A stretch of DNA of 64,000 nucleotides from Macrostomum lignano (Eukaryota), in contig NIVC01002560.1 of NCBI GenBank assembly GCA_002269645.1, forward strand, positions 97,635-161,634. The letters are read 5' to 3'. Below are positions 5,301 through 45,600 of this stretch, piece by piece (position 1 is the stretch's first letter; each line of letters opens with the position of its first letter). The notes beneath the pieces were generated by a model. That model saw nothing but the letters and a program-made list of their open reading frames with translations. It ran no database searches and was not told the origin of the DNA. The position numbers were made by a program, and so were the translations under genes.

Positions 5301-6375
5301 CTATGAAAATTCGCAGAAAAAGGATAAAAATGCCCACTGCCCACTGTTAGTAGGCAAGTAAGTTTAGAGCCCATGTGCTAGCGCGGGATTTGGGAAAAAG
5401 TGCGTCCTCATCAGTATCTAAAAATAGCTCAGCTACGGTAATCAATCATGCGCGCTTACACTAGACTAGTTGCTTAACTTTCTACCCTGTCATGCTTGAC
5501 AGCAACCAAAGCGTGACCCTTTGACATTTACGAAAAAGGTGATGAACGACCTCACGAGGGGCCCGTTTCTCTATAAATACAAGCGGCCCAACGCGGCACC
5601 GGAGTTATTCTCCCCACGGAAGAGGAGCGCTCCGAAGAGGTTGTCTTTAGAAAGACATCCTAGTTAACCAGTCAATCGAGACTTGGTTCGGTTGTTGCGG
5701 TAAGCCTTTCTTATTTGCGCCAGTTGTTGTAAGAGACGTCTCGCTCAAGTTTATTGGGACTTGAGTCTGTTTAAGTCTGTTGAGACTTTTGAGTCTGTTG
5801 AGACTCCATTGGCAGTAGTCGCCCGACCGAAGGACTACCCTAGTAGATCTTAGAGGAGCTACTAGAGATATCCGGAGCATTACCTAGAGTGCATCGCGGC
5901 ACTGCTAGAAGAAGAAGGCTTAAGTGAAACCGCTATTTTGGCGCAGGGATCCCATTGTTGACACGAGGCCTCTGATTGGTCCTGACTGCAGATACCGGCC
6001 GGAAGTAACGTTAAGTGCAACTACAAAGGAACCAGGACCAGAGCAACAGAAGAATCAAGGCGCCTGAACTACTGATCCAACAAGACCAGTATCGAGAACA
6101 ACTGTTGCAGAGAACCACTGAAGAGATATCTCCAAGAAGTCAAGGTAAGAAGTACCTTTATTGATAACTGGGTTGCCTGGCTACAAAGCTAGAAGTGATT
6201 GTTCCTTGATTATCAAAAGGACTGATAACCAGGAACACATCACTACGATTGCCAATTGCGAGGCTAGCCGCCAAGTGCTGAAGTCTCGATTCTTTGGATT
6301 CTCTTATCAACAAGATTAGTACTAAGCTACAAAGGCCTCACCTCCGAACACAAGCAGCAGCAGGGCGATGCGCAT
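2370..6375 (-). CDS. Ly6/uPAR (three-finger, LU-domain) GPI-anchored protein, 110 aa, 3 exons
   Basis: Exons 6375-6342, 2760-2654 and 2561-2370 with GT/AG borders and matching phases (1, 0). Protein: signal peptide MRIALLLLVFGASMLTAEA, then ISCYTCTGC...GCNYCAK...RSCLPSC...YCCDGNLCNS (10 Cys, CCxxxxCN motif), then hydrophobic GPI signal LSWLLLLLPAAALAA. Confidence 0.9.
2940..6310. mobile_element. Probable decayed LTR-retroelement fragments filling Ly6 intron 1
   Basis: TATA-like CTATAAATAC near 5572, AATAAA near 3475, several CCAAT boxes (4390-4800) and short stop-riddled frames. No RT, integrase or paired LTRs recognised. Confidence 0.3.
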
Positions 6376-7019
6376 TTTGTGGCAGCAACGGCAAGCGGCG
6401 AAGATGGCTGTGCAATTGAAGGCTGTTTGGCCGGGTGTGCGGCTGCTGGCTGGGTGTGCGGCCCCTCAGCTCGGGGGTATAGTTATACACCACAAACGGT
6501 TGCTATGGAGCTGCAATCGGGGTGGCTGAGAGATTCAAGAGTTTGCTAGTCGGAGTTTGTGCAGAAGCGGGGGCTGGCGGCATTTTCTGCTATGCGTGCT
6601 TCGCCCCTATAGCTGGGCGTTCTGTTTTAAGAAAATTTTTACAGTCAATTGCGAATTACAGCTGGAGCTCGAGTTCATTCGGACTCGCCTACAGAATCTG
6701 CGGGTCTGCTGCGCTCCATCAACCAGAAACGAGGCCGTCTATATTGTGCTCACTCGACAATTAAAAATAAAAATATAAAAATGAATTTCACTATACGAGT
6801 ACTCTCGTAAATCTCGTAAAATTCTCTAGCTATAAAAGCCAAGGCGAAGCTCCTGCTTATTTTGATGTTCGTTCAAAAGGGTTCGTTGGATTCGGAAAGA
6901 TTTATTTCACTCTAGTGTTGCAAATCTGCACAGCAAACGTGCGCTACGCCGAGCCCTTAAGCCAGCCATTGCGCTCATTTTCCATTGTTCAGAGCCATCA
7001 TTTCGTGAGAAACTGTGCA

Positions 7020-17474: not shown

Positions 17475-18254
17475 GATATGAGATAGACCCTAAGATATAG
17501 ATATAGGCCTAATATAAAAGATATAGGGCCTAAACATCATTATATTATAATGTTTAACTAAATCAATAACTCTATTAACTGTTTTACTTAAATATATATA
17601 TTTTTGTGAAAATATTATTTACCTAGGGGCCTAACTAAAATAGTTAATCAAATGTAGAGAAAACAGATTTGGGCCTAGCATAAATATAAATGTGAAAATA
17701 AAAATTATGAAATTGAAAAGCATAAAGCTTTGTAGGCCCTAGAACTTAGCTATCATAGGCCTACTAGCAACTTCTCAAAATAGTGCAGCTTTACTAGGAT
17801 TAACTACAACAATACACTTTAAGAACAGAATTTTGTAGAATTTTTCCATGAATTGTGTGATTTATGATTTTTTTATTTCTTATGGACCTATCAATATTCA
17901 ATAGGCCTATCAACCGATTTTTGTTTGTGCACATGGTCTATGATGCTACATCTATCCTGATATATGTCTCTAAAAGCCACTTTAATATATACCATTAGCA
18001 TTAAATTTAGTGCCCAAATGGGATTTTAAACTTTTTATAAATTTTAGATTCTAGGAAAAATGTTTTCTGGAACACAAGAAATAAAGAAAAACTACAATAG
18101 ATCATAGCAACGAATAAATGCTACTAGAATATATGTTTTTAAATAATTTATTTGTTTTAAAATCATTCTTTAATGTTAATTAAAACAGTTTTGGTTTAAA
18201 TAAAATATTTAAAAGTCAAAACTTGCAATGAAACTTCTTCTTGAAGAGTTTAAT

Positions 18255-22899: not shown

Positions 22900-24846
22900 G
22901 CCCCATTGTGTCAGCCATGCCCATCAGTCTGACCCCATTGTGTCAGCCATGCCCATCAGTCTGACCCCATTGTGTCAGCCATGCCCATCAGTCTGACCCC
23001 ATTGTGTCAGCCATGCCCATCAGTCTGACCCCATTGTGTCAGCCATGCCCATCAGTCTGACCCCATTGTGTCAGCCATGCCCATCAGTCTGACCCCATTG
23101 TGTCAGCGGTGCCCATCAGTCTGACCCCATTGTGTCAGCCATGCCCATCAGTCTGACCCCATTGTGTCAGCGGTGCCCATCAGTCTGACCCCATTGTGTC
23201 AGCGGTGCCCATCAGTCTGACCCCATTGTGTCAGCCATGCCCATCATTCTGATCCCATTGTACCAGCGGTGCCAATCAGTCTGACCCCATTGTGTCAGCC
23301 ATGCCCATCAGTCTGACCTCATTGTGTCAGCGGTGCCCATCAGTCTGACCCCATTGTGTCAGCGGTGCCCATCAGTCTGACCCTATTGTGTCAGCCATGC
23401 CCATCATTCTGATCCCATTGTGCCAGCGGTGCCAATCAGTCTGACCCCATTGTATCAGCCATGCCCATCAGGCTGACCCCATTGTGTCAGCCATGCCCAT
23501 CAGTCTGACCCCATTGTGTCAGCGGTGCCCATCAGTCTGACCCCATTGTGTCAGCCATGCCCATCAGTCTGACCCCATTGTGTCAGCGGTGCCCATCAGT
23601 CTGACCCCATTGTGTCAGCGGTGCCCATCAGTCTGACCCTATTGTGTCAGCCATGCCCATCAGTCTGATCCCATTGTGTCAGCGGTGCCCATCAGTCTGA
23701 CCCCATTGTGTCAGCGGTGCCCATCAGTCTGACCCTATTGTGTCAGCCATGCCCATCATTCTGATCCCATTATGTCAGCCATGCCGATCAGTCTGGCCCC
23801 ATTGTGTCAGCCATGCCCATCAGTCTGATCCCATTGTGTCAGCCATGCCCATCAGTCTGACCCCATTGTGTCAGCGGTGCCCATCAGTCTGACCCCATTG
23901 TGTCAGCGGTGCCCATCAGTCTGACCCCATTGTGTCAGCCATGCCCATCATTCTGATCCCATTGTGCCAGCGGTGCCAATCAGTCTGACCCCTTGTGTCA
24001 GCCATGCCCATCAGTCTGACCCCATTGTGTCAGCGGTGCCCATCAGTCTGACCCCATTGTGTCAGCGGTGCCCATCAGTCTGACCCTATTGTGTCAGCCA
24101 TGCCCATCAGTCTGACCCCATTGTGTCAGCGGTGCCCATCAGTCTGACCCCATTGTGTCAGCGGTGCCCATCAGTCTGACCCTATTGTGTCAGCCATGCC
24201 CATCATTCTGATCCCATTGTGCCAGCGGTGCCAATCAGTCTGACCCCATTGTGTCAGCCATGCCCATCAGGCTGACCCCATTGTGTCAGCCATGCCCATC
24301 AGTCTGACCCCATTGTGTCAGCGGTGCCCATCAGTCTGACCCCATTGTGTCAGCCATGCCCATCAGTCTGACCCCATTGTGCCAGCGGTGCCAATCAGTC
24401 TGACCCCTTGTGTCAGCCATGCCCATCAGTCTGACCCCATTGTGTCAGCGGTGCCCATCAGTCTGACCCCATTGTGTCAGCGGTGCCCATCAGTCTGACC
24501 CTATTGTGTCAGCCATGCCTATCAGTCTGACCCCATTGTGTCAGCGGTGCCCATCAGTCTGACCCCATTGTGTCAGCGGTGCCCATCAGTCTGACCCCAT
24601 TGTGTCAGCGGTGCCCATCAGTCTGACCCTATTGTGTCAGCCATGCCCATCAGTCTGACCCCATTGTGTCAGCGGTGCCCATCAGTCTGACCCCATTGTG
24701 TCAGCCATGCCGATCAGTCTGGCCCCATTGTGTCAGCCATGCCGATCAGTCTGGCCCCATTGTGTCAGCCATGCCCATCAGTCTGATCCCATTGTGTCAG
24801 CCATGCCCATCAGTCTGATCCCATTGTGTCAGCCATGCCCATCAGT
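22900..24846. repeat. 32-bp minisatellite (CCCCATTGTGTCAGCCATGCCCATCAGTCTGA), about 60 copies
   Basis: Read directly; ends about 60 nt before the LAMTOR3 ATG. Confidence 0.97.
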
Positions 24847-24906
24847 CAACACCCTCCTTGCCCACTGCTTCATGCCAGCAGCCACAGCCCGATAGAGAAC
24901 CGCGCA

Positions 24907-27900
24907 ATGGACTCACTCAGGCGCTTCCTAGAGAGCTACCTGTCCCAGGTGGACGGCCTGTCTGCCATTTTGCTGTCGGACCGAGACGGCGTCGGTCTGA
25001 TGAGCGCCGCCCAGCCCGAGTGCCAGTGGGCCGTGGAGGCTGTCGTGAAGCGTGGCCTGGTGCCCGGCTTCTGCCAGGCGGCCGAGCAGGCCGGCAAGCT
25101 GGGGGTCGGCCCGGCCAGCGCCTTCGTCACCAACTATGGCCAAATGACGGTAAGAGTCTTGGGGCTAATTTCCGACTGCTTGTCATTTCCGTGTTGTCAG
25201 CTATTTGTTAGGCTTGTCAGCTACTGTCAATATGCATGTGTCAGGTTTTTTCTGCCACTGTTAGATGCATCTGGGTCAGCAGACTTATAAGCTAGTGTCA
25301 GTCCCTTGTGTCAGACTTGTGAGTCATTATCAGCTCCGTGTGTCAGACTTGTGAGTCATCATCATCAGCTCCGTGTGTCAGACTCCCTCTGGTAAATAAA
25401 CCAGATAACACCACAAGATAATTTGCGAATCTTGTCAGATTCACTACCGATTTCCTTGTTTGAGTTGCGAAACTGGTGAAACCACCAGATTCGTCACCAG
25501 ATAATTTTTTGTTTTCTTGTTTGACTGTTATCTGGTGAGTTATCTGAATTTCACCAGATAACATGGCCCGAATCTTGCTTAGAAATCAGATTACATGACA
25601 AGATTTGCCACCAGATAATTTTTTGTTTTCTTGTTTGACTGTTATCTGGTGAGTTATCTGAATTTCACCAGATAACATGGCCCGAATCTTGCTTAGAAAT
25701 CAGATTACATGACAAGATTTGCCACCAGATAATTTTTTGTTTTCTTGTTTGACTGTTATCTGGTGAGTTATCTGAATTTCACCAGATAACATGGCCCGAA
25801 TCTTGCTTAAAAATCAGATTACATGACAAGATTTGCCACCAGATAATTTTTTGTTTTCTTGTTTGACTGTTATCTGGTGAGTTATCTGAATTTCACCAGA
25901 TAACATGGCCCAAATCTTGCTTAGAAATCAGATTACATGACAAGATTTGCCACCAGATAATTTTTTGTTTTCTTGCTTGATTGAATCTTGTTTGAATCGG
26001 AATTTCACAGGATAACATGGTGCGAATCTTGTTTGAAAATCAGATAACAGTACAAGATTCGCCACCAGGTAATTTTTTGTTTTCTTGTTTGATTGAATCT
26101 TGTTTGAATCGGAATTTCACAGGATAACATGGTGCGAATCTTGTTTGAAAGACAGATAACAGTACAAGATTTAAATCAGGATAACTGTGCATTATCTAGT
26201 CTGTAAGAAACCTGTGTGAATCTGAAATTTACCGGATAACAGGATGCGAATCTGGTTTGCAAACCAGATAATGGAAAAAGATTTCAATCAAGATGCCTTT
26301 GTGTTATCCGGTCTGTAAGAACCCGTTGTACTTTTCACCCATAATTTTTTTCAGAATTTCGTGATCCAGGCCTAATTTAATTGATTTCCAAGTGAAGGCC
26401 CGGATCAGCATTTTTAGCCTGGAATAGCCCCTTTTTTCCGGAAATGTGATCCTGCAAAAGTTCGGGAAAAAGGAAAGCTGTTCCGGCTGCATTTTCCGAA
26501 ATTTTTCACCTTGAACACTGCTAAATTCTAATTGTAGACCCAAATTTCAGGTTTTCCAAATGAAAATGTTCTGGATGAGATTTCAGGAGTTCAGTCGGAA
26601 TTCCTCAGTGATCTAGACCAAGTGATTCGGCAAATCCACAGGGATCAGCTCCCATTGACTCGAATCTCGATGAAGTTATGGATAAGACTGGACTTCGCGT
26701 CTGTTGTGGCTCAAGGCAGCTGCTAAGCTGACCTGCGATGGATAATCAATCCTCGCTTCTGTTGGGACTCAAGGCAGCTGCTAAGCTGACCTGCGATGGA
26801 TAATCAATCCTCGCTTCTGTTGGGACTCAAGGCAGCTGCTAAGCTGACCTGCGATGGATAATCAATCCTCGCTTCTGTTGGGACTCAAGGCAGCTGCTAA
26901 GCTGACCTGCGAGGGGTAAAGTGCCATATATCAGCAAACGCTAGCGCTCGTAATGTGAGGCCGTGCCCACCCTCCCTGCAGGTGATAGCTTTGTTGGCTC
27001 TCCGACAAACTATTGCATTCTTATTGTGCTGGAGAGGTTTGACTCCCAATGGCATGTAGTCTGTCGCGGTTACTTAGTGTATCAGATTACCCTATTATCT
27101 GGTGCAGCTGGGTGTCTAGATGGAGCTGTGGCATGGTTCCAAAAGCTCCTACTGGCCCAGTTCTAAGGTAGCCTTTTTTTAAGACAGACGTTATTCTAGC
27201 TCTTGCTAGAGCATGCTCCATTGGGTTGTCTAAAGCGTCTGCAGTGTTGGTGTATGGCCACCAGTGAGGGATAATTGAACCCCGCTTCAACCGATGAATC
27301 AAAGTTGAGCAGTTGACTGAAAATGCTGACCTACGAGGGGTAATCAAACCTCGCGTCTGTTGTGGCTCAAGGCAGCTGCTAAGAGTAGTCACTTTTATTT
27401 GACTACGCGGGTCAATCTAATCCGAGGGGTAATAAAGCCTCGAAATTGCAAGGTGAATTGATCTGCTTTTCGGAGGCACTGTAGCGTCCGTAATGTGAGG
27501 CTGAGCCCATCCTCCGTACAGGTGACAATTGAAAAATTGTTGCGCCCTGATTGTGTGCGAGAGGTTTGACTACCACTGGCATGTAGTCTATCACAGCTGC
27601 TTAGTGTGTCAACGGGCTGAATGATTCTATCGTCATATTTGACGCTTAGAAGCATGAGTCAGCCAACCATATTGTTTGGCACAGCTGGGTGTCTAGACTG
27701 AGACTGTGGCATAGTTCCAAATAGCTCTAACTGGCCCAGTATGCAAAGCAGCTTTCCTATTAAGATAGACGCTAATCCGATTTTTTTCGGTGCATGCTCC
27801 ATTGGTTTGTCTAAGGCGTTTGCAGTTGCACCAGCCGAGAGCAGATCAAGTCAAGAGAGTAGTCGTTACAGACCATGTCGGTAATCTTGTCGAGATTTAA

Positions 27901-29949
27901 TAAATCCTCGAACAAGTCAAGGGAGTAGTCGTTACAGACCATGAGTGTCGGCAATCTTGTCAGCCACTTTTTCCGGAGGGTGTCACTGCTTCGAACGACG
28001 CAGTTGATGATGCCGTTGGACGATCGTCCATCGCACTAGCGACATCTGCAACGCCAAGTCGGTTGGATATTACCGTTGGCGCACGGGATTGCGAAAACAA
28101 TCAGGTAAGAGTTTCCAGCGTAGTCGGCATTTCGTGGACGCAACGAAGCCAGCGCCGCGCGAGCCGGCGCATCAGATGATACACCATTCACTTTGTCTCC
28201 GGTCTACGAGCAGCCGATCAACGAAAGCCAGTTGTTTCCGGATGACGACTATGCTACGAATGAAACTTCTATCGACACAGCCGACGCTACTTGTGAACGG
28301 TCGTATAATATGGCAATGCCTGTCGGCACACCGTCACTATCTGTTAGAGCTAGACAATCGAGAGTGTATGTACCTTACTGTGTTTTTTATAGCTGTGTAT
28401 ATGTCGGAGAAACTGTCATCCATCGCCATTCAATTTAACTTAATACTACAGAGTCGTTCCATTGCGCCGACATATAATGCAAGCCCCCGTCGGCGGTCTC
28501 ATTAATCGCCGTCCGCGGGCGCGACCCGGTCTTTCAAACGTCTGACTCACGCGTCGACTGCCGCCAGAGTCGCGTCCGAGTACAGCAGGTCCGAGCTCGC
28601 CAGCTGATACACCAGGTCGCAGCAGATCACCAATCCAGTAATATCAATTGGTATCCACAGTATAAGTAGATCTACTTATAACTGGACTCCCGAAACTCAG
28701 ACTTATGCCACACTGTTCTCCAGATGTTTTCGTTCATGTTGAGATGCCGTTTAGTTGACACCCCGCTGTTAAATAGATGCTTCTCACAACATCTTGAAGC
28801 ACCAACTTTTTATACGCTTCTTTACTGCGAAATTTGATTGTCGGTGCCTTCTGCCTTTTATTATCATAAATTACCCGACTGTTATCTGATCAGGAAATCT
28901 TGTTTTTCTGACAAGATAACAAGCAAGATAACATTATGTTTCCCTGCAGGATTCGCGTGAATTACCCGACTGTCACCTGGTCAGCGAATCCTGTTTGCCA
29001 GACAGGATAACAAACAAGATAACAAACAGGATAACACGATATTTCCCTGCAGGATTCACATGAATTACCCGACTGTTACCTGGTCAGCGAATCCTGTTTG
29101 CCAGACAGGATAACAAACAAGATAACAAACAGGATAACACGATATTTCCCTGCAGGATTCGCACGAATTACCCGACTGTTATCTGGTCAGCAAATCCTTT
29201 TTGAATCTTGTTTGAAACAAGGAAACGTAAGATTTCGTCACGCAAACAAGATTCATACAAGATAACATTTTGCATAACCGGAATAGGGCATGTTATCTTG
29301 TTTGAGCGAATGTTATCTTGTGGTGTTATCTGGTTTATTTACCAGAGGGCTTGTGAGTCATCATCATCAGCTCCGTGTGTCAGACTTGTGAGTCATTATC
29401 TGCTCCGTGTGTCAGACTTGTGAGTCATCATCATCAGCTCCGTGTGTCAGACTTGTGAGTCATTATCATCATCTCCGTGTGTCAGACTTGTGAGTCATTA
29501 TCAGCTCCGTGTGTCAGACTTGTGAGTCATCATCATCAGCTCCGTGTGTCAGACTTGTGAGTCATTATCATCATCTCCGTGTGTCAGACTTGTGAGTCAT
29601 TATCATCATCTCCGTGTGTCAGAATTAAGTCACTGTCAGATCTGTGTGTCGGTCATTGTCAGTCTTGTCGGTTACTTTGAGATCCGTGTGCGTCACATCC
29701 ACTGTCAGCCATTGCCAGACCCATGTCAGCTCTGCCTCTACCCCCCCCCCCCACCGTCCCACCCAGATCGTGCTGCTCAGCTGCCAGCCGCTGGTGGTGA
29801 CGCTCATCGGGCAGCCGGATTGCAACATCGGCGCCATGACAGGCCTACTGAAGGACCGCGCCTTCAGCGAGCAGCTGCGCCGCTTGCAGCAGGTTCTGCC
29901 GCAGGAGTCCGGCGATGCGGCCGGAGGCTCCGGGCCAGTTAGAGTCTAA
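24907..29949 (+). CDS. LAMTOR3: Ragulator subunit LAMTOR3 (MP1), 141 aa, 2 exons
   Basis: Exon 24907-25149 MDSLRRFLESYLSQVDGLSAILLSDRDGVGLM...FCQAAEQAGKLGVG...TNYGQMT (donor GTAAGA, phase 0). Exon 29767-29949 IVLLSCQPLVVTLIGQPDCNIG. Matches recalled LAMTOR3 motifs LKRFL..VEGLHAIVVSDRDGVP..ATDQGSKLGL..LPLVVSFIA. Confidence 0.9.
25497..25975. repeat. 114-bp subterminal tandem repeat (about 4 copies) of the EnSpm-like element
   Basis: CCAGATAATT recurs at 25497, 25611, 25725 and 25839. Confidence 0.9.
26710..26911. repeat. 58-bp tandem repeat (about 3.5 copies) inside the EnSpm-like element
   Basis: CTCAAGGCAGCTGCTAAGCTGACCTGCG at 26710, 26768, 26826 and 26884. Confidence 0.9.
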
Positions 29950-30057
29950 TAGCCATCCTGCCGTCTGCGACTCCGGCCTTAATGATGCTGGGACTGCCGG
30001 ATCATCACCTGCGATTATCATGCTGATCCACTGGGAGACTTGCAGTGCCCTCTCACC

Positions 30058-30530
30058 CTCAGTTGCTAGGCCACCACCCTCCCAGATCCTCAATTACTGG
30101 GCCACCACCCTCCCAGATCCTCAGTTGCTGGGCCACCGCCCTACCAGATCCTCAGTTGCTGGGCCACCACCCTCCCAGATCCTCAGTTGCTGGGCCACCG
30201 CCCTACCAGATCCTCAGTTGCTGGGCCACCACCCTCCCAGATCCTCAGTTGCTGGGCCACCGCCCTACCAAATCCTCAATTGCTGGGCCACCACCCTCCC
30301 AGATCCTCAGTTGCTGGGCCACCGCCTTACCAAATCCTCAATTGCTGGGCCACCACCCTCCCAGATCCTCAGTTGCTGGGCCACCGCCCTACCAAATCCT
30401 CAATTGCTGGGCCATCTCCCTACCAGATCCTCAGTTGCTGGGCCACCGCCCTACCAGATCCTCAGTTGCTGGGCCACCGCCACCCTCCCAGATCCTCAGT
30501 TGCTGGGCCACCGCCACCCTCCCAGATCCT
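30058..30530 (+). repeat. About 31-bp minisatellite of the CCCAGATCCTCAGTTGCTGGGCC family, downstream of the LAMTOR3 stop
   Basis: Unit CCACCACCCTCCCAGATCCTCAGTTGCTGGG, about 15 copies. Confidence 0.95.
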
Positions 30531-31084: not shown

Positions 31085-31955
31085 AGGTGTGGGCAGGGTG
31101 TGAGGCAGAAGTGAGCAGGTGTGAGTCAGAAGTGAGCAGGTGTGAGTCAGAAGTGAGCAGGGTGAGGGGCAGTAGTGAGCAGGGCGAGGACCAGATGTGA
31201 GCAGGGTGAGGGCCAGATGTGAGCAGGGTGAGGGCCAGATGTGAGCAGGGCGAGGGCCAGATGTGAGCAGGGTGACTCGGTGAGGGCCAGATGTGAGCAG
31301 GGTGAGGGCCAGATGTGAGCAGGGTGAGGTGCAGAAGTGAGCAGGGTGAGGGCCAGATGTGAGCAGGTGTGAGTCAGAAGGGAGCAGGGTGAGATGCAGA
31401 AGTGAGCAGGGTGAGGGCCAGATGTGAGCGGGTGAGGGCCAGATGTGAGCAGGGTGAGGGCCAGATGTGAGCAGGTGTGAGTCAGAAGGGAGCAGGGTGA
31501 GGTGCAGAAGTGAGCAGGGTGAGGGCCAGATGTGAGCAGGTGTGAGGCAGAAGTGAGCAGGTGTGAGGCAGAAGGGAGCAGGGTGAGGTGCAGAAGTGAG
31601 CAGGGTGAGGGCCAGATGTGAGCAGGGTGAGGTGCAGAAGTGAGCAGGGTGAGGGCCAGATGTGAGCAGGGTGAGGTGCAGAAGTGAGCAGGGTGAGGGC
31701 CAGATGTGAGCAGGTGTGAGTCAGAAGGGAGCAGGGTGAGGTGCAGAAGTGAGCAGGGTGAGGGCCAGATGTGAGCGGGTGAGGGCCAGATGTGAGCAGG
31801 GTGAGGGCCAGATGTGAGCAGGTGTGAGTCAGAAGGGAGCAGGGTGAGGTGCAGAAGTGAGCAGGGTGAGGGCCAGATGTGAGCAGGTGTGAGGCAGAAG
31901 TGAGCAGGGTGAGGTGCAGAAGTGAGCAGGGTGAGGGCCAGATGTGAGCAGGTGC
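31085..31955. repeat. Mixed 22-bp minisatellite (GAGCAGGGTGAGGGCCAGATGT / GAGCAGGGTGAGGTGCAGAAGT)
   Basis: Read directly; source of the His/Leu-rich ORF 31147-31977. Confidence 0.92.
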
Positions 31956-32181
31956 AAGCTACAGATAAGCATGGCATTTTGGATAATAGCTCAGGTGTTT
32001 GACAGAAGGCACAGGCCTGTGTTGGGCATAATTTTCCAGTTCCCAGGCAAGCGCCTTGGATGAACTGAAGACAAGCACCTGGGCCGTTAGACGTGCAGAC
32101 TTAATTGGTGGGCCGGGCAAAGCCCACGGGCCTCAAATAAGCCTCCAAAACCGCTTAGATCGCAGCCAGCAGAACAGCGCA

Positions 32182-35100
32182 ATGACAGCCGAGGGCAGCC
32201 GCTGCTCGGTGTGCCAGTGCCCGTTCCCGGCCGGCAATCACTACGGTGCCGTGACCTGCCACGCCTGCAAGTCTTTCTTCAAGCGGACGGTGCAGCTCTC
32301 GCTGTCCTACAACTGCATGCGGAGGCCGCGCCACTGCTCGCTCAGCTCTGAGCGCAGCCGATCTTGCGGCTTCTGCCGGTTCAAGAAATGCCTTGAAGTT
32401 GGAATGCGGCCGGCTCTGGTGCGATCGCTTGCCCCGGATACGGGGTTAGTGACTGATTGGAACCTCAGTGGCTGAGAGAATCAGTGCCCGAATAATTCTG
32501 GGCTAGTTCAGAGTGAATGAGGCTAGTATAGGGTGACTGAGGCTGGTTCAGAATGACTGAGGCTAGTTCAGAGTGACTGAGCCTAGTTCTGGGTGACTGA
32601 GGCTTGTTCAGAGTGACTGAGCTTAGTTCAGAATGACTGAGGCTAGTTCAGAGTGACTGAGCCTAGTTCTGGGTGACTGAGGCTAGTTCAGAGTGACTGA
32701 GGCTAGTTCAGAATGACTGAGGCTAGTTCAGAGTGACTGAGCCTAGTTCTGGGTGACTGAGGCTTGTTCAGAGTGACTGAGCTTAGTTCAGAATGACTGA
32801 GGCTAGTTCAGAGTGACTGAGCCTAGTTCTGGGTGACTGAGGCTTGTTCAGAGTGACTGAGCTTAGTTCAGAATGACTGAGGCTAGTTCAGAGTGACTGA
32901 GCCTAGTTCTGGGTGACTGAGGCTAGTTCAGAGTGACTGAGGCTAGTTCAGAATGACTGAGGCTAGTTCAGAGTGACTGAGCCTAGTTCTGGGTGACTGA
33001 GGCTAGTTCAGAGTGACTGAGGCTAGTTCAGAGTGACTGAGGCTAGTTCAGAATGACTGAGGCTAGTTCAGAGTGACTGAGTCTAGTTCTGGGTGACTGA
33101 GGCTAGTTCAAAGTGACTGAGCCTAGTTCGAAGTGACGGAAGCTAATTCAGTGACTGAGCAGCTTAAATAATACGAATTGACAGGATCGGGCACGCCTGC
33201 CGAACTCCTGTGGCCGGAGTTCAGCAACCACCGCTGCCACCTCAACAAGGCTTCCATCAACGCCTGTTGCCAAAGCCATCGGGCTCGGGAATTCCGGCCG
33301 ACCAGCCTGTCCGAGACCAGCCGCAGGCGGAGACAGGAAACGCGGACGACACCCCGGACTTGGAGGCGGTGCAGGTCGATCTGAGCGGCGGGCCCGCCGG
33401 TCAGGACGGCCCAGACATGACCGAGCTGATGTCCAGAGGCATCTGGTTGCTGGTCGAGTCGTACCTGGGCGCGCTGTTGCGCTGGGCAAAGCGACTGCCC
33501 GGCTTTGACGGCATCCTCCTGGATGATCAGGTGGCCCTGCTGCAGCAGCACTGGCTGGATGTCATCGTCCTACAGGTGCGGAGTCCGCTGGCCATAGTGG
33601 GTTCTGTACTCCAGCTTGCTATATATAATACTATACTCATCACACCTGGACCCACTTGGCTATGAGCAGGTGGCCTGGAACTCGCACCCCTACACTGGCT
33701 GGCTGAACTTCTGCTCCGGCTTCAGCCTGCACGAGCGGCAGGAGCCGCTGATCCGCCAGGTGCCCGCGATCAGCCGGCACACCCGTGTGCTGGCGCAGCG
33801 CCTGAGCCTGCTGGACCTTCGCCACGCTGAGCTGCTGCAGCTGCGCGCCATCATCTTCCTGGAGACTGGCTGCTCCGCAGGCTATGCCGACCCCGATCGA
33901 ATCGACACCCCCCGGCGGTAAAAATCACGTCGAAATGACGTCGATATTCGCCTTTCAAAAACTTGCGACAAATGAGTAGTCGTTTGAACCTTCATTTGAC
34001 GTCGAAATTTCGATATGAAATTTTTATCTTCTTTTTTGCAGAAATAATTATTAGTGATATTTGAAAAATATTTTTTCAACGTGATTTTCAGTGTATTGAA
34101 AGGATCAATAAATTCAGTAAAACTGACACAACGTTTTTTTTGTTTCAACGCATCGCGAGATACACCTTTTTAAAAATATCGCCATGCTGAATGTCGATCT
34201 ATTATTTGTCAATTGCAGACTTCCAAATTATTTTACTGCGATTCATACGTAAATCTTTAACGTAAATTTACTGTAACAAACATGGCAATTCATATTCTTT
34301 CATTGCGTTTCATTATTTTTTCGATAATTAATGTAATATACAATTTATGCGTTTAAAGTTCGATGTTTTATAATACTGTTGCTTATAGGACGGATAGGTT
34401 TAACTTTTTATACAGGATAAGTGAATTAATAATAAAGTAGCCATAAATTAGCAACTTTTTACGTTTTAGTACAGCTTATTGGAAATTAATAATAGTGTAA
34501 TATTTAATAAACAATAATAGATTAGCTTTTATAAATGTAATAAAAGCACAATTCTATAGCTAAAAGAATGTTTGTTATGAAAAAATTTTTAGGACATTTA
34601 GGACATAGACGTAATTATAATTTTAGCCTAAATAGTATATATAATTATCCCATTTAAACATTAATTATTTAATTATTCATTCTAATATATGTTTGTTACA
34701 TTCTAAATAAAAGCATAGCCCAACCCATAACTGCTCATGAAATAACTAGAACAGCTATAGCATTTAAGTACCTAATCGCCAGCATCTAGAGCATAAAATA
34801 CTACTCATACTATAATTATCTATTTTTTCTATGTAATGAAAACAGGATATACTATGTAACTATGCTATAAAAACTTTTATAAATGCTCTATATGGCCCAG
34901 GAATATATAGAACATTGTATAGCATTTTACTTGTTTAGTAAAGCCGCTGCTTACTCTACCAAAAATTCCAGCAAATGCCCCTCTGTCAACTCGGCGGCTG
35001 AGGACGTCCTACGTGACCGCACAAGACGCAAAAGCTGAATTTCCGTGTGGAGTAACCGCGCAGACGCCGTTGATTTTCAGTGTTTCCCTTTCACGATTAC

Positions 35101-35926
35101 AATATGTTGAATTACATTTAGTTGCATTTGTTGACATTGTTGTTCCTTATTTTTCCATCGTCTATTTTCTATTCTTGATAGCTTTGATGCTATTTCTATG
35201 ATCGTTTCCAATTGCTGGTGAATTGAATATACACTGTATACTTTTTCATGGTTGCAGGATAATAGGATCTGGTTTGGATAGCAAATGAAACGTCATGCAG
35301 CCTTGCTTGGCATTTTATGCTTAAATATTTCTTTCCTATTTAGGTAGATTAGTGACTTTAGTGTATGGATTAACATTTATGTTTCGTCAGCTTAGTTCGT
35401 TTGTAGATCGTACATGTAGTTCGTCAGTTTATAACTATTGAAAAAAATAACTTTTTATAACTATGAAACTAATGCACTACAGTATATTATTAATATTAAT
35501 TAGTATATGTAGATAAAAATCGTCAATTTGTCGAAAATCGCCATCTACTTGCGGTCATCATGAATATGAACGACGTCGACTTTTCGCCATCAATAGTGGA
35601 AAACGCGACGTCGCACACTCTACATCTGATGGCGAAAATTTCGACGTCGAAATCGTGGTTCAAATCGACATGAAATTTCGACGTCGCTTTTCGACGTCAT
35701 TTCGACGTGATTTTTACCGCCGGGCCTGCAGCGGCGCCACATCTTGGCGCTGGCGCTCGCCTGCCCCTGCCCGGTGCGCCGCGCCAAAATTCTGCAGCTC
35801 AGCGGTGCTGTCACCGCCGGCCGGCTGCACGCCCTCGCCTACTTCGACCGCGTGCTCAACCTGGAAGGCCAGGTGCCGCCCCCGCTGGCTGGGGAGGCTC
35901 TGCGGAACTCGTTTTCCAGTGCTTAG
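32182..35926 (+). CDS. Divergent nuclear hormone receptor (C4 DBD + LBD, loosely ERR/NR3-like); LBD exon interrupted by a transposon (probable truncated allele)
   Basis: Exon 32182-32444 CSVC...NHYGAVTCHACKSFFKRTVQ...C..C...CGFCRFKKCLEVGM. Exon 33185-33575 ...LLRWAKRLPGFDGILLDDQVALLQQHWLDVIVLQ. Exon from 33670 VAWNSHP..LNFCSGF..LAQRLSLLDLRHAELLQLRAIIFL..IDT, resuming at 35727 LQRRHILAL...RRAKILQL... to TAG at 35926. Splice phases 2 and 0 agree. An upstream exon cannot be excluded. Confidence 0.85.
32510..33160. repeat. 20-bp minisatellite (GACTGAGGCTAGTTCAGAGT), about 32 copies, in nuclear-receptor intron 1
   Basis: Read directly. Confidence 0.95.
33911..35724. mobile_element. CMC/EnSpm-like non-autonomous DNA transposon (1814 bp) inserted in a coding exon
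   Basis: 34-bp TIRs CCCGGCGGTAAAAATCACGTCGAAATGACGTCGA; 2-bp TSD CC (33909-10, 35725-26); CGACGTCG subterminal motifs; AT-rich non-coding interior. Confidence 0.9.
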
Positions 35927-36639
35927 GGACTCTGCGCTCTGTAGTGCCTGTAAATTATCCTTTGTTTTCTGTTTTCTTCAATCAGGAAGATATTCTCTAG
36001 TCCAGTGTCGAGACTGACTACTCGTACATTCCTCTGCAATGCCTGCACTCAAATATACTAGCGTTGTCAGAGTTGTGCCACTGCTATTTTATTATAAAAA
36101 TTAGACAGGACTTGAAAACAATAAATTATAGTCTCGACTTCCTGTTCTTAACTCGCCCCAGTTCCACTGAGGCAGCTCATTCGATCCCACAGCCCAACAT
36201 CTTGGTTCATTTGCTCATAACATGGTCATAAAGCTGAAGCATACCGCTAGCTTTTTGTTACCATTGACCGCAGGTTTGATTTGGCAAGTCTGACAGGACA
36301 GGCAATCAGAAGTTAAGTAGTTATTTATTATTAATTAGTCTGATTTCAGTTGTCAACATGAAGACACTTAATACCACGCAGCATATAAATGGATGGAGTC
36401 GGCGTGGCTACAATAACAATAAATTACCAGACGCGCATAATATTATTACAGTCCGCAATGCTTACTATTAGTAGCATAATAAACATCCCGCGTGAAAAGT
36501 GCAAGCAATATCAATTGAAGTTTGCTACGGTGAAATTGGTTAATTATCGATCGATATGAAATCAAATCCTGCAGCTATAGCAATCAGACAGGTAATCAAG
36601 GACATGGATCAGCGCTGGATCTGTCTATCACCACTGAGT

Positions 36640-42600: not shown

Positions 42601-45600
42601 TTCAGCCTGTCTGGTATGCTCACACGTTGCGCTTCCCACACCGCTGCTTGGCCTGTAAAAACATCTGATTGAGCACACGTGGTCTGACAGTTAATTCAGT
42701 TGCAGTTTGACTCGTTCGATATGTGCATCACAAAATGCTACGTAATTCACTAATTCTTAACCTACAGATATGACGGTTCACACTAAATTCCTAGGCTCCT
42801 TTTTTGTAGAGGAACGATAGTCTATGGCCAAACCTCACTAAAAACGAAGCCTGAGAACTCAAAACGAGGCCTGTTAACCGGTTAACAGGCCTAAGAACAA
42901 GGCCTGAGAACATTTTAGAACGACTATAATTTGTCAGTTAGTCCATTAGAAGTATAAAACTATCAACAGCAGTAAAGACCGATTCATTCTTGCCGATTTA
43001 CTCGAACATGATTTCTACGCTGTTGGTGTCACCGTGGACAGTCATACGCATCTTCTTGGTAGTACCCTCAGACACGACATCTTGCTCATTGGTCCGCCCA
43101 TTGGACTCCACGGCTCCTCCGGCGTGTAGAGCGTAGGTCATACGCGAATGGTCCTGGACGTCTAGCCGTATGTACCTCTCAATTGCGTTGGACGAATGTC
43201 CAGTGACGCGGGCTATATCGTCCCTAGCCAGTCCAGCCCGATGCAACCTGCTGGCACAAGTCTTCCTTAGAGACTGGTTTGAGAATTTACCATCCGTAGA
43301 CACGGGCTTGGTGATATTCGCCACAATGGAGTCGAGAGTATGCCGGCCGATAGGTCCATTCTGGTACCATCTGACGCTCTTAATGGCAGACTCACTTCGA
43401 AACCAAGTCAGAAAGAGGTTCTCGTGCTTACATTGCCCAAACCTTTCCTTTCTCGCTTTTAATTTAAGCATTGAATCTTTTACTTTAATTTTTTTTGTCT
43501 ATGGTTAAATGTGGGGGCTGCGCCCCCCACACCCTGCTTTTGACGAATACCTCACTCCCACTCCCAGTCGCTTCCAAAATCTATAGATTAAGTACGATCT
43601 TTGTCTGTTCTTTTGGTGTCTATGGCAGAGAAAGGCCGAGGAGACACCAAAAGAACAGACAAAGATTATATACATCACTTGTTTGCTTTGTCACAAAATA
43701 CACAATTTTTGTCTAATAATGGTTTTGATTCTAAAGTCTGAATTCAACTGTTTGATGGCTTTAATTCAATGCTCCCATACACTGTTTTGGCCATAGACAA
43801 TTGTCAAAGCACGGGTTGAATATGGCTGGCCGTGTCTTGAATTGAATGCTCAATCTCTTAAATAAAATTAAAAATGCTGTACCGATATCGTGAGATTCAG
43901 TAGATAAAGAATGATAGCGTCAACGCAAGCTTTACAGGGTTTACAGAATAAATACCAAATTTACAGGGTTCTTCTGATCTTTGTTCTATTATTTTAAAAG
44001 TAGCAATATCCCAGTTACTTATTGCGAGGTGTTTATCTTTACAAGATAGATATCGATCTTTTAAAAACGCTCGATCAAAACTTGGCAGACAGCAACCCGA
44101 CAAAAGAGACACTGTCGTCTTGCCTGCCGGACTACAAGGACACGCTGCAGCCAGGCAACTGGATCATGCTGACCGGCCCCTGGGTGTTCCTGACTGTGGC
44201 CGCATTCGGTCTGGGAGCCAACAGCCTGTCTATGGCGGTGTTCATCCGAGAACGCAAGCTGATCAGCAGCAACCCCCGCCTGCTAATCATCAGCCAAGCC
44301 AGCGTAGACCTTATCGGCTGCGTGCTGGCCGCCATCAAGTGGCTGACGATTTACGCGCCAATCCGCGTGCCGGCCAACTTTATTGGCACAATTGTGTGCC
44401 ACCTGTGGTTCAGCGAATACGTTATCTGGCTAACCGTTCTATGCAGTACGGTAGGTACTGCATCCTCTGAGCATGCACCACTTTTTACCCTCTGGAATAC
44501 TTGCTACTTATATCAATCACTATCTTAACTAAGTTCTTGGCAATTTTACCCTCCCAACACTGCAGTTGAACCTTCAATTCATTACCCTGGAGCGCTTTGT
44601 GGCCCTCGTGTTTCCACTGGTGACCAGAAGCGCCACCAAGCTCAAAGCCGGAATTGCTGGAATCTGGATCTACACCGCCCTGCACATGTGGCGCGTCTTC
44701 ATCGACCTGAGCCGCGGAGACGGCAGCCATAGCAACTGCTGCGTCTACAATCGCGCAATTCCAGCGTGGGTGTCGCGCTCATTCGGGCTCGTGAACTTCA
44801 GTATGCTGTACGCCTTGCCGGTGGTGAACATGAGCATCTGCTACTCCGCCATGATCATCACGCTGCGAAGGAACCGCAGCTGCATCTCGGAGGAGAGCCA
44901 GAAAAAGAAGCTGGCAGCGTCCAGCAAACTCATCAAGACTTTCCTAGTGGCTGGAGTGGCTTACGTGCTCTGCTTCACGGCTAATCAGATCAGCTACCTG
45001 CTGCACATGTTCGACGTCTTCTACTTCGACCAGAAGGGGCTGTTCTACAATGCGACACTGCTGCTGGTGAACGCGAACATGATCGTGAACCCCGTCATCT
45101 ACTTCGTGTTCATGCCGTCTTTCCGAGCTGCTCTGCTTAAACTGTGCCGAGCAGGGACCGAGGGCAAGCTCAACCAGGCCGCGACCGGCAGCACAGGTGC
45201 TCAGCAGCCGCAAGCACAGCCGCAAACAACAAGGCTTTAGCACCTCAACCAAGCGCTGATCCATGAAAATTCGTCTTCACTAATTTGCAGTAAACCATTG
45301 GCTCATTAATAAAAGATTTGCTAATTGGAACGATCGCCGTTTCGCCAAGCTTTCATAAATTTTCAGAGATTAAGATATATTTTAGGAAACAAAATTAGCT
45401 ACAGAAAGCTCCCACAAAAAGTTTCAATTTCACATTCAGTGTGGTTCTCTATAAACAGCATCCGTATGCACCAGTTTAATCCAATTTAAACACAACCGCA
45501 CACAACTGCACATGTCAAGTATAAGCAAATATATTAATAAATGTTTACTATATATTTGGTTACCTGTTGTAGCTTGAACTATTCTTTTTTCCAGCTAAGC

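What the first reader, a model, noticed from the sequence alone, without database searches (positions are those of the whole stretch)
33901..35926. Young EnSpm-like transposon splits the nuclear-receptor LBD exon; precise removal restores the frame
Seen: a 1814-bp element with 34-bp TIRs and a CC TSD sits after ...ATC GAC ACC C. Deleting it plus one TSD gives IDTLQRRHILAL..., which continues open to the stop at 35926. The left TIR supplies an in-frame TAA (33919-21). Splicing from the TIR's GTAAAA (33918) to the CAG at 35731 would shift the frame by +2, so simple splicing-out does not rescue it. Established: LBD helices 9-12 carry dimerisation and AF-2 functions. Inference: this allele is null or makes a DBD-intact, AF-2-less protein that could act dominant-negatively; an intact allele or homeolog may exist elsewhere.
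Basis: partly seen in the sequence, partly recalled or inferred. Interest (0 to 1): 0.75.

Follow-up and report, generated by a model that had tools for sequence, protein, structure and literature searches.

The report
Transposon-broken copy of a flatworm nuclear receptor
A 1.8-kb non-coding DNA transposon has recently landed in the last exon of one of the three genomic copies of a nuclear-receptor gene (MlUn4) in the flatworm Macrostomum lignano, cutting off the end of the protein; the other two copies lack the insertion, so this is an ordinary loss of one copy.

Summary
Window 33911-35724 is a 1814-bp, AT-rich, ORF-less element with perfect 34-bp terminal inverted repeats. It is flanked by CC/CC and sits in the last exon of a nuclear-receptor gene of Macrostomum lignano: MlUn4, a divergent receptor with P-box CHACKSFFKR. 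Deleting the element plus one CC gives a 364-aa protein identical to GenBank PAA59703.1. The sequence as it stands gives the 301-aa truncated product already deposited as PAA56901.1. Two syntenic copies in the same assembly carry the empty site, so the insertion is real, recent and private to one of the three copies of the locus that the assembly holds. The "intact homeolog" prediction is met. "EnSpm-like" is not supported. The ends are 5'-CCC..GGG-3', not CAC..GTG, and there is no transposase. The 2-bp duplication also fits other groups. A second non-autonomous element in the window (25385-29349) has a CT duplication and shares the terminal motif CCCNNNGGTAAA. One oddity remains: both empty sites read T where both duplicated copies read C. 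A null or dominant-negative effect is untested, and redundancy makes a phenotype unlikely. This is an ordinary insertion allele carried by an unclassified transposon.

The parts
32182..32444 (+). MlUn4 exon 1: start codon and the C4 zinc-finger DNA-binding domain (P-box CHACKSFFKR)
   Evidence: Translation. Pfam zf-C4 on residues 7-76, E=3.5e-18. The DBD is identical to MlUn4 in PMC8363021, supplementary files 3 and 6.
32445..33184 (+). Intron 1 (GT..AG), mostly filled by a 20-bp minisatellite (32501-33159)
   Evidence: Splice sites read. The spliced protein matches PAA59703.1 exactly. TRF result.
33185..33575 (+). Exon 2: hinge and the N-terminal part of the ligand-binding domain
33670..33910 (+). 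Exon 3, part upstream of the insertion. It ends in ...GAT CGA ATC GAC ACC C (residue T298).
   Evidence: 99.95% identical to L001 over 31900-33909.
33909..33910 (.). Left copy of the 2-bp target-site duplication (CC)
   Evidence: Comparison with the empty sites in L001 and L002. The inserted 1816 bp can slide by only 0-2 bp, so the duplication is at most 2 bp.
33911..35724 (.). Element E1: a 1814-bp non-autonomous TIR transposon. GC is 32% and the longest open stretch is 92 codons.
   Evidence: Absent from the syntenic loci L001 and L002. No Rfam match. No protein homologues of its ORFs.
33911..33944 (+). Left TIR, 34 bp, perfect: CCCGGCGGTAAAAATCACGTCGAAATGACGTCGA. GACGTC subterminal motifs follow, out to about 34005.
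33919..33921 (+). In-frame TAA supplied by the left TIR. The product ends ...IDTPRR (301 aa).
   Evidence: Identical to GenBank PAA56901.1 minus its 4-residue 5' extension. UniProt A0A1I8HFC2 also ends in IDTPRR.
35691..35724 (-). Right TIR, 34 bp, perfect. Preceded by clustered GACGTC/TTTCGACGTCG subterminal repeats at 35571-35703.
35725..35726 (.). Right copy of the 2-bp target-site duplication (CC)
35727..35926 (+). Exon 3, part downstream of the insertion. It encodes helices 9-12 (LQRRHILAL...PPLAGEALRNSFSSA) and the stop TAG at 35924-35926.
   Evidence: Identical in L001. L002 differs only by a 1-bp deletion at 35879.
25385..29349 (.). Related element E2 (not part of the finding). 3965 bp, non-autonomous, 37-bp TIR beginning CCCTCTGGTAAA, 2-bp duplication CT. 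It lies in a 35-bp minisatellite within an intron of the upstream LAMTOR3-like gene.
   Evidence: Present in L001. Absent from L002, whose array reads GACTTGTG uninterrupted.

Best explanation
The window is a Macrostomum lignano contig (NIVC01002560.1, assembly Mlig_3_7). It carries one of the three assembled copies of the divergent nuclear-receptor gene MlUn4.

A non-autonomous cut-and-paste (class II, TIR-bearing) transposon of 1814 bp inserted into the last coding exon, at the start of LBD helix 9, and duplicated 2 bp of target. The left TIR provides a TAA three codons into the element. The allele therefore encodes a 301-aa protein with the DNA-binding domain and LBD helices 1-8. It lacks most of helix 9, helices 10/11 (the usual dimer interface) and helix 12 (AF-2).

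The insertion is recent:
- The TIRs are identical.
- The rest of the ORF is unblemished.
- Both other copies have the empty site.

The most likely consequence is loss of function of this one copy, buffered by the two copies that lack the insertion. That would be an early step of duplicate-gene loss in a neopolyploid.

**Shown:** the insertion, its boundaries, the empty sites, the truncated and restored reading frames, and the existence of copies without the insertion.
**Inferred:** the cut-and-paste mechanism (no transposase was seen), loss of function, and the lack of a phenotype.
For: **The element**
- TIRs and their statistics.
- Composition break.
- No long ORFs.

**The gene**
- zf-C4 plus Hormone_recep.
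- Alignments to RAR-beta and RXR-alpha LBDs run across the restored junction in register.
- Species and gene identity.

**The three copies**
- Restored protein equals PAA59703.1, and as-is protein equals PAA56901.1.
- Three syntenic loci, each with a LAMTOR3-like gene upstream and an acyl-CoA dehydrogenase gene downstream.
- L003 is 100% the window. L001 and L002 join the two exon halves directly.
- Three subgenome haplovariants (S, L1, L2) are represented in Mlig_3_7: PMC10733133.
- Assembly redundancy: PMC5730564.

**Support for a 2-bp-duplicating transposon type**
- A second element in the window has a 2-bp duplication, a shared terminal motif and presence/absence polymorphism among the copies.
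Against: - No transposase and no other copy of E1 was found, so mobility is inferred from structure and the empty sites only.
- Both empty sites have T where both duplicated copies have C. Window-specific substitutions are otherwise about 0.25% per site. The simple 'insert plus 2-bp duplication' account therefore needs either a private SNP exactly at the target or some insertion-associated change.
- The contig's nearest relative switches from L001 to L002 about 300 bp downstream of the element. Zadesenets et al. report that chimeric scaffolds make up 36% of this assembly's length. Which subgenome carries the insertion is therefore uncertain.
- No RNA or protein evidence was available here.
Confidence: 0.85

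Rival explanations
1. The element belongs to the EnSpm/CACTA (CMC) superfamily.
For: - A 2-bp duplication lies within the 2-5 bp range of the CACTA/Mirage/Chapaev/Transib clade (PMC12730594).
- Clustered subterminal repeats (GACGTC-containing) resemble the subterminal motif arrays of En/Spm (own knowledge).
Against: - The termini are 5'-CCCGG..CCGGG-3'. [quoted passage not shown]
- No transposase or remnant is present.
- 2-bp duplications also occur in PHIS relatives and in Tc1/mariner.
Confidence: 0.1
2. The insertion is an assembly artefact (chimera or misjoin) and no such allele exists in the animal.
For: - Chimeric scaffolds make up 36% of Mlig_3_7 by length.
- The nearest relative of this contig switches shortly after the element.
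Against: - A misjoin would not create a complete element with perfect 34-bp TIRs placed between two bases that are adjacent in the paralogous loci, with a 2-bp duplication.
- The same truncated product (…IDTPRR) appears in predictions from a second protein source, UniProt A0A1I8HFC2. That this entry derives from the separately built ML2 assembly is my recollection, not a tool result. ML2 and Mlig_3_7 used the same PacBio reads.
- The switch point lies between 35927 and 36038, not at the element.
Confidence: 0.03
3. The allele is still functional because the element is removed from the mRNA, in effect as a new intron.
For: - The left TIR offers a GT at 33918 (CG|GTAAAA).
- AG sites exist at 35731, 35797 and 35802.
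Against: - 33918 joined to 35731 shifts the frame by +2.
- The only in-frame GT/AG pair found (33918 to 35802) deletes 23 residues of helices 9-10 and adds PRR.
- The deposited gene model, from a transcript-guided pipeline, stops at the TIR's TAA.
Confidence: 0.05
4. The truncated receptor is made and acts as a dominant negative on the intact copies.
For: - The DNA-binding domain is intact.
- The stop is in the last exon, so nonsense-mediated decay may not apply (general knowledge).
- Helix-12-deleted receptors are classic dominant negatives (own knowledge).
Against: - Truncation at helix 9 also removes the helix 10/11 dimer interface and about a quarter of the LBD core. Misfolding and instability are more likely than a stable AF-2-less receptor.
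- There are no expression data.
- The allele sits in an inbred laboratory line alongside two copies that lack the insertion.
Confidence: 0.08
5. The insertion is ancestral, and L001 and L002 are excision revertants rather than original empty sites.
For: Both empty sites differ from the window's flanks by one base exactly at the junction, which could be read as a footprint.
Against: - It needs two independent excisions that left the same in-frame, length-neutral, synonymous change.
- Cut-and-paste footprints normally add or delete bases (own knowledge).
- The TIRs are still identical and the host ORF is undamaged.
Confidence: 0.03

Closest known systems
CMC (CACTA/EnSpm-Mirage-Chapaev) DNA transposons
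   Same: Short (2-bp) target-site duplication, TIRs, and arrays of short subterminal repeats.
   Different: The ends are CCC..GGG, not CA(C)..(G)TG. No transposase is present, so the defining DDE/C(2)C/H(3-4)H signature cannot be checked. The duplicated sequence is CC (E2: CT).
piggyBac / IS1380
   Same: 5'-CC(C)..(G)GG-3' termini. E2 even has CCCT..AGGG. Precise removal restores the host sequence, although excision has not been shown here.
   Different: piggyBac makes 4-bp TTAA duplications (PMC10045372). Here the duplication is 2 bp (CC, CT) and neither empty site contains TTAA.
PHIS superfamily (PIF/Harbinger, ISL2EU, Spy, Pangu, Nuwa)
   Same: The superfamily includes lineages with 0-4 bp duplications, 2 bp among them.
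   Different: ISL2EU duplicates AT within AATT, and its TIRs start with GG. Harbinger-type TIRs start with G or A (PMC4482050). E1 and E2 start with CCC and duplicate CY.
Transposon-insertion loss-of-function alleles and duplicate-gene loss after polyploidy
   Same: A mobile element in a coding exon truncates one redundant copy while the homeologs stay intact.
   Different: Nothing essential. The host is a neopolyploid flatworm with three haplovariants (S, L1, L2). The copy affected cannot be assigned to a subgenome here.
C-terminally truncated nuclear receptors (helix-12/AF-2 deletions acting as dominant negatives)
   Same: The DNA-binding domain is retained and AF-2 is lost.
   Different: The truncation is much deeper, from helix 9. 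It removes the dimerisation helices too, so the classic dominant-negative mechanism is doubtful. Nothing was tested.

Membership tests
Class II TIR (cut-and-paste) transposon, non-autonomous | Terminal inverted repeats | tested here: met
   34/34 perfect, 49 nt at 86%. 0 of 100 shuffles gave a match.
Class II TIR (cut-and-paste) transposon, non-autonomous | Target-site duplication, with an empty site at a homologous locus | tested here: met
   L001 and L002 join the flanks directly. The insert plus duplication is 1816 bp and the duplication is 2 bp. Caveat: the empty sites have T where both duplicated copies have C.
Class II TIR (cut-and-paste) transposon, non-autonomous | Multiple copies in the genome, and an autonomous partner encoding a transposase | not testable with these tools
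   There is no access to the whole M. lignano assembly. No second E1 copy was found in the window or the fetched loci. The ORF search was empty and the metagenome scan was empty. Only a related element, E2, was seen.
EnSpm/CACTA (CMC) | Termini 5'-CAC(TA)..(TA)GTG-3' | tested here: not met
   The termini are CCCGGCGG..CCGCCGGG. The criterion comes from PMC12730594.
EnSpm/CACTA (CMC) | 2-4 bp target-site duplication (3 bp for canonical EnSpm) | tested here: inconclusive
   2 bp. This is within the clade's range but is not specific to it.
EnSpm/CACTA (CMC) | CMC-type DDE transposase | tested here: not met
   No ORF exceeds 92 codons. The ORFs have no homologues. As the element is non-autonomous, this says nothing about its partner.
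piggyBac | TTAA target and 4-bp duplication | tested here: not met
   The empty sites read ACCTTGCAG (E1) and GACTTGTG (E2), with 2-bp duplications.
piggyBac | 5'-CC..GG-3' termini | tested here: met
   E1 has CCCGG..CCGGG and E2 has CCCT..AGGG. The criterion comes from PMC10045372.
ISL2EU (PHIS) | AT duplication within the A|AT|T target; TIRs starting with GG | tested here: not met
   The duplication is CC (E2: CT) and the TIRs start with CCC. The criterion comes from PMC4482050.
Tc1/mariner | TA duplication | tested here: not met
   The duplication is CC.
Nuclear receptor superfamily (host gene) | C4 double zinc-finger DBD followed by a helical LBD | tested here: met
   Pfam zf-C4 at 3.5e-18 and Hormone_recep at 2.2e-9. 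PDB hits to NR4A2, RAR, RXR and others. Listed as MlUn4, with an atypical P-box, in PMC8363021.

The most novel reading that the evidence does not exclude
E1 and E2 may represent an undescribed, currently active lineage of cut-and-paste transposons in Macrostomum. It would combine piggyBac/IS1380-like 5'-CCC..GGG-3' ends with 2-bp (CY) target duplications.

The C-for-T change seen in both duplicated copies could then be a mark of its chemistry. For example, the element might carry 2-nt donor-flank overhangs into the new site. Such a lineage would be contributing to the loss of duplicate genes in this neopolyploid.
Probability: 0.15. Interest if true: 0.5.

Novelty: new member of a known kind. 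Interest (0 to 1): 0.25.

Why it matters
**For Macrostomum genetics.** GenBank PAA56901.1 and UniProt A0A1I8HFC2 are not a short isoform. They are the product of a transposon-broken copy of MlUn4, a gene that two published receptor inventories counted (PMC8363021).

**For genome evolution.** This is a datable, single-lesion example of one of three young copies being knocked out by a mobile element.

**For transposon biology.** The combination of end sequence and duplication length does not fit the superfamily descriptions I could consult. The family is evidently recent, so it may be worth a proper genome-wide look. None of this is surprising in kind.

Tried and rejected
- **Alternative boundaries.** A 4-bp palindromic CCGG duplication, with TIRs starting CGGTAAAA, gives a frameshifted C-terminus and is excluded by the empty sites. 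Duplications of 3, 5 and 8 bp do not match the flanks.
- **Looking for more copies or an autonomous partner.**
  - TIR search of the window and loci found only the two ends.
  - BLAST of the whole element against the window, L001 and L002 found nothing else.
  - A 483-aa concatenate of all long E1 reading frames against the 5.8-billion protein set gave no hit.
  - An exact TIR scan of JGI metagenome contigs gave no hit.
  - Pfam on ten long window ORFs found no transposase.
  - E2 in W and L001 has no transposase ORF.
- **Rfam** on 32000-36500 found nothing.
- **AlphaFold2** of the restored protein from a 4-sequence alignment gave mean pLDDT 39. I used only the helix positions, no 3D inference and no fold search.
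- **A third CCCNNNGGTAAA site** at 17618-17629 has no inverted partner. I treat it as chance.
- **Yuan & Wessler 2011** (superfamily duplication table) is not held in the library.
Full report
**1. The observation**

- The region contains an inverted repeat with arms 33911-33959 and 35676-35724 (49 nt, 86% complementary). The outer 34 nt are perfect.
- A 31-nt core of the repeat occurs exactly twice in the 64-kb window, in opposite orientation. It occurred 0 times in 100 shuffles.
- The 1814 bp between the outer ends have 32% GC, against 68-70% in the coding sequence on either side.
- No open stretch is longer than 92 codons.
- Short GACGTC-containing repeats cluster near both ends. Eight of the window's 16 GACGTC sites lie in the element, seven of them within about 155 bp of an end.
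- The flanks read ...ATCGACACCC|CCCGGCGG...CCGCCGGG|CCTGCAG.
- Read as it stands, the frame runs ...I D T P R R and stops at TAA 33919-33921.
- After deleting 33911-35726, it continues ...IDTLQRRHILAL... to TAG 35924-35926.
- Joining GT 33918 to AG 35731 adds 7 nt and drops 5, a net +2, so the frame is lost. The only in-frame GT/AG pair nearby (33918 to 35802) would delete 23 residues.

**2. The host gene**

- The spliced gene is 32182-32444, 33185-33575, 33670-33910 and 35727-35926. It encodes 364 aa with a C4 zinc-finger DBD (Pfam zf-C4, 3.5e-18) and a nuclear-receptor LBD (Hormone_recep, 2.2e-9).
- Alignments to RAR-beta and RXR-alpha run across the restored junction in register. DPDRIDT|LQRRHILALALAC aligns with [20 protein letters not shown] (helix 9). 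The C-terminal PPLAGEALRNS aligns with the RAR-beta helix-12 motif PPLIQEMLENS.
- The AlphaFold model is poor (pLDDT 39). It places helices at 293-310, 314-343 and 353-363.
- The insertion after T298 therefore removes most of helix 9, helices 10/11 and helix 12, 66 residues in all.
- The homologue search identifies the organism as Macrostomum lignano.
- The DBD is the one named MlUn4 by Wu & LoVerde. It is a divergent receptor with the atypical P-box CHACKSFFKR. Their comparison table (supplementary file 6) places it in the NR3 (ERR) block. That table lists PAA86206.1, PAA59703.1 and PAA56901.1 as the same gene (PMC8363021, supplementary files 3 and 6).

**3. Three copies, one broken**

- PAA59703.1 equals the restored protein residue for residue, apart from a 4-residue 5' extension.
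- PAA56901.1 equals the truncated 301-aa product.
- UniProt A0A1I8HFC2 also ends in IDTPRR. From memory, this entry comes from the other assembly, ML2.
- The three GenBank proteins map to three contigs of GCA_002269645.1. All have the same neighbours: a LAMTOR3-like gene upstream and an acyl-CoA dehydrogenase gene downstream.
- L003 is the window itself, 100% identical over 5.1 kb.
- L001 and L002 align up to 33909 and again from 35727, with the two points adjacent. Both read ...ATCGACACCTTGCAGCGG.
- This matches what is published for the DV1 line. It has three haplovariants (S, L1, L2), all represented in Mlig_3_7, with about 2% SNP divergence between them (PMC10733133). The assembly also has 180 Mb of duplicated blocks at 95% identity or more (PMC5730564).
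- PAA86206.1 (L002) has a frameshifted tail caused by a C5-to-C4 run at the position of 35879. UniProt A0A1I8J483 carries the same diagnostic substitutions but has the normal tail. This is probably a homopolymer error, so that copy is probably intact. If so, two copies are intact and one is disrupted.

**4. Age**

- The TIRs are 34/34 identical.
- The host ORF has no other defect.
- L001 differs from the window at one position in the 2010 bp upstream, yet it lacks the element.

The insertion is younger than the very small divergence between those two sequences, or gene conversion has since homogenised the upstream part. 'Young' is supported.

**5. The duplication and an oddity**

- Against the empty sites, the inserted block can slide by only 0-2 bp. 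The duplication is therefore at most 2 bp, and with symmetric TIRs it is CC.
- Both empty sites have T (TTG Leu) at the position where both duplicated copies have C (CTG Leu).
- Window-specific substitutions are otherwise rare. There is one in 2010 bp upstream (33572) and nine in about 2040 bp downstream, the nearest at 36191. A private SNP falling exactly in the 2-bp target has a prior of roughly 0.5-1%.
- The simplest account is still a pre-existing synonymous SNP. Both duplicated copies carry C, so the change predates or accompanied the insertion.
- Target preference or carry-over of donor-flank nucleotides are alternatives I cannot test with one site.

**6. What kind of element**

- The window holds a second, unrelated-in-body element, E2 (25385-29349). 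Its 37-bp TIRs begin CCCTCTGGTAAA, and it lies in a 35-bp minisatellite.
- Every intact minisatellite unit reads GACTTGTG. The filled site reads GACT|E2|CTTGTG, which is a 2-bp CT duplication.
- E2 is present in L001 and absent from L002.
- E1 and E2 share the terminal pattern CCCNNNGGTAAA. It occurs 5 times in the window against 0.5 expected, but the pattern was chosen after seeing the ends.
- Neither element encodes a transposase.
- Comparison with published descriptions:
  - The CACTA/Mirage/Chapaev/Transib clade has 5'-CA..TG-3' ends and 2-5 bp duplications (PMC12730594).
  - ISL2EU duplicates AT and starts with GG. Harbinger-type TIRs start with G or A (PMC4482050).
  - piggyBac/IS1380 has CC..GG ends but 4-bp duplications (PMC10045372).
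  - Tc1/mariner duplicates TA.
- E1 fits none of these. By Repbase's rule for non-autonomous elements (same duplication length plus an 11-nt terminal match with at most 1 mismatch; PMC4455052), E1 and E2 would not even be formally co-classified, because they have 3 mismatches.

I therefore call E1 an unclassified class II TIR element. 'EnSpm-like' is not supported.

**7. Artefact?**

- The contig's closest relative switches from L001 (99.95% upstream) to L002 (97.7-98% downstream, against about 95% for L001). The switch lies between 35927 and 36038.
- Chimeric scaffolds make up 36% of this assembly by length. The contig may be a haplotype mosaic, or L1 and L2 may have recombined.
- This does not make the insertion artefactual. 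A complete element with perfect TIRs and a duplication, sitting between two bases that are adjacent in both paralogues, is not what a misjoin produces.
- The truncated product is also predicted from a second protein source. However, ML2 and Mlig_3_7 share the same PacBio reads.

**8. Consequence**

- **Shown:** the allele encodes DBD plus LBD helices 1-8, then PRR and a stop.
- **Inferred:**
  - The stop is in the last exon, so the transcript may be stable and end at one of the AATAAA signals inside E1 (34107 onward).
  - The GenBank model comes from a transcript-guided pipeline, which hints at expression but does not prove it.
  - A protein lacking helices 9-12 has lost the dimer interface and AF-2, and probably its fold, so loss of function is the likeliest outcome.
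  - A dominant-negative effect through DNA-site competition is possible but unsupported.
  - With two copies lacking the insertion, no phenotype is expected.

**9. Verdict**

It is an ordinary recent transposon knock-out of one redundant copy of a known gene. The truncated product is already in the databases, but I saw no indication that it has been recognised as an insertion allele. The only mildly unusual aspects are the unclassifiable combination of end sequence and duplication length in the element, and the C/T discrepancy at the target.

Noticed in passing
window 25385-29349; L001 1093-7148; absent from L002 (array around 6113-6906): A second non-autonomous TIR element (E2). It has a 37-bp TIR CCCTCTGGTAAATAAACCAGATAACACCACAAGATAA, a 2-bp CT duplication and internal 103-114-bp tandem arrays. 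It sits in a 35-bp minisatellite within an intron of the LAMTOR3-like gene and is polymorphic among the three copies.
   Followed up: yes
window 31900-33909 versus 36038 onward (L001, L002): The three copies show mosaic relatedness. The window is 99.95% identical to L001 upstream of the insertion. From about 36038 it is closer to L002 (97.7-98%) than to L001 (about 95%). This could be an assembly haplotype switch or recombination between the two large-chromosome variants.
   Followed up: partly
window 33910 and 35726 versus L001 11741 and L002 11298: Both copies of the target-site duplication carry C where both empty sites carry T. It is the only window-specific difference within about 300 bp of the element.
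   Followed up: partly
L002, at the position of window 35875-35879: A C5-to-C4 run causes the frameshifted C-terminus of PAA86206.1. UniProt A0A1I8J483 is of the same haplotype but has the normal C-terminus, so this is probably a homopolymer error in Mlig_3_7.
   Followed up: partly
window 24000-24847, 29350-29623, 30057-30530, 31089-31954, 32501-33159: There is a dense set of minisatellites (periods 32, 35, 31, 22 and 20 bp) around and inside the gene. The 20-bp array fills most of receptor intron 1. The 22-bp array has a very strong G skew.
   Followed up: partly
window 33576-33596 (start of intron 2): UniProt predictions A0A1I8ISA6 and A0A1I8J483 include seven extra in-frame residues (VRSPLAI, or VRSPLAV in A0A1I8J483) read from the start of intron 2. 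This suggests an alternative donor site or a prediction artefact.
   Followed up: no
window 17618-17629 (- strand): A solitary CCCCTAGGTAAA matches the shared terminal motif of E1 and E2. It has no inverted partner within the window and is probably chance.
   Followed up: yes
window 44566-45240 (+) and about 36.6-46 kb (-): The neighbouring genes are a rhodopsin-family GPCR ORF (7tm_1, 1.4e-17) and a multi-exon acyl-CoA dehydrogenase gene on the minus strand. Both are syntenic in all three copies.
   Followed up: partly
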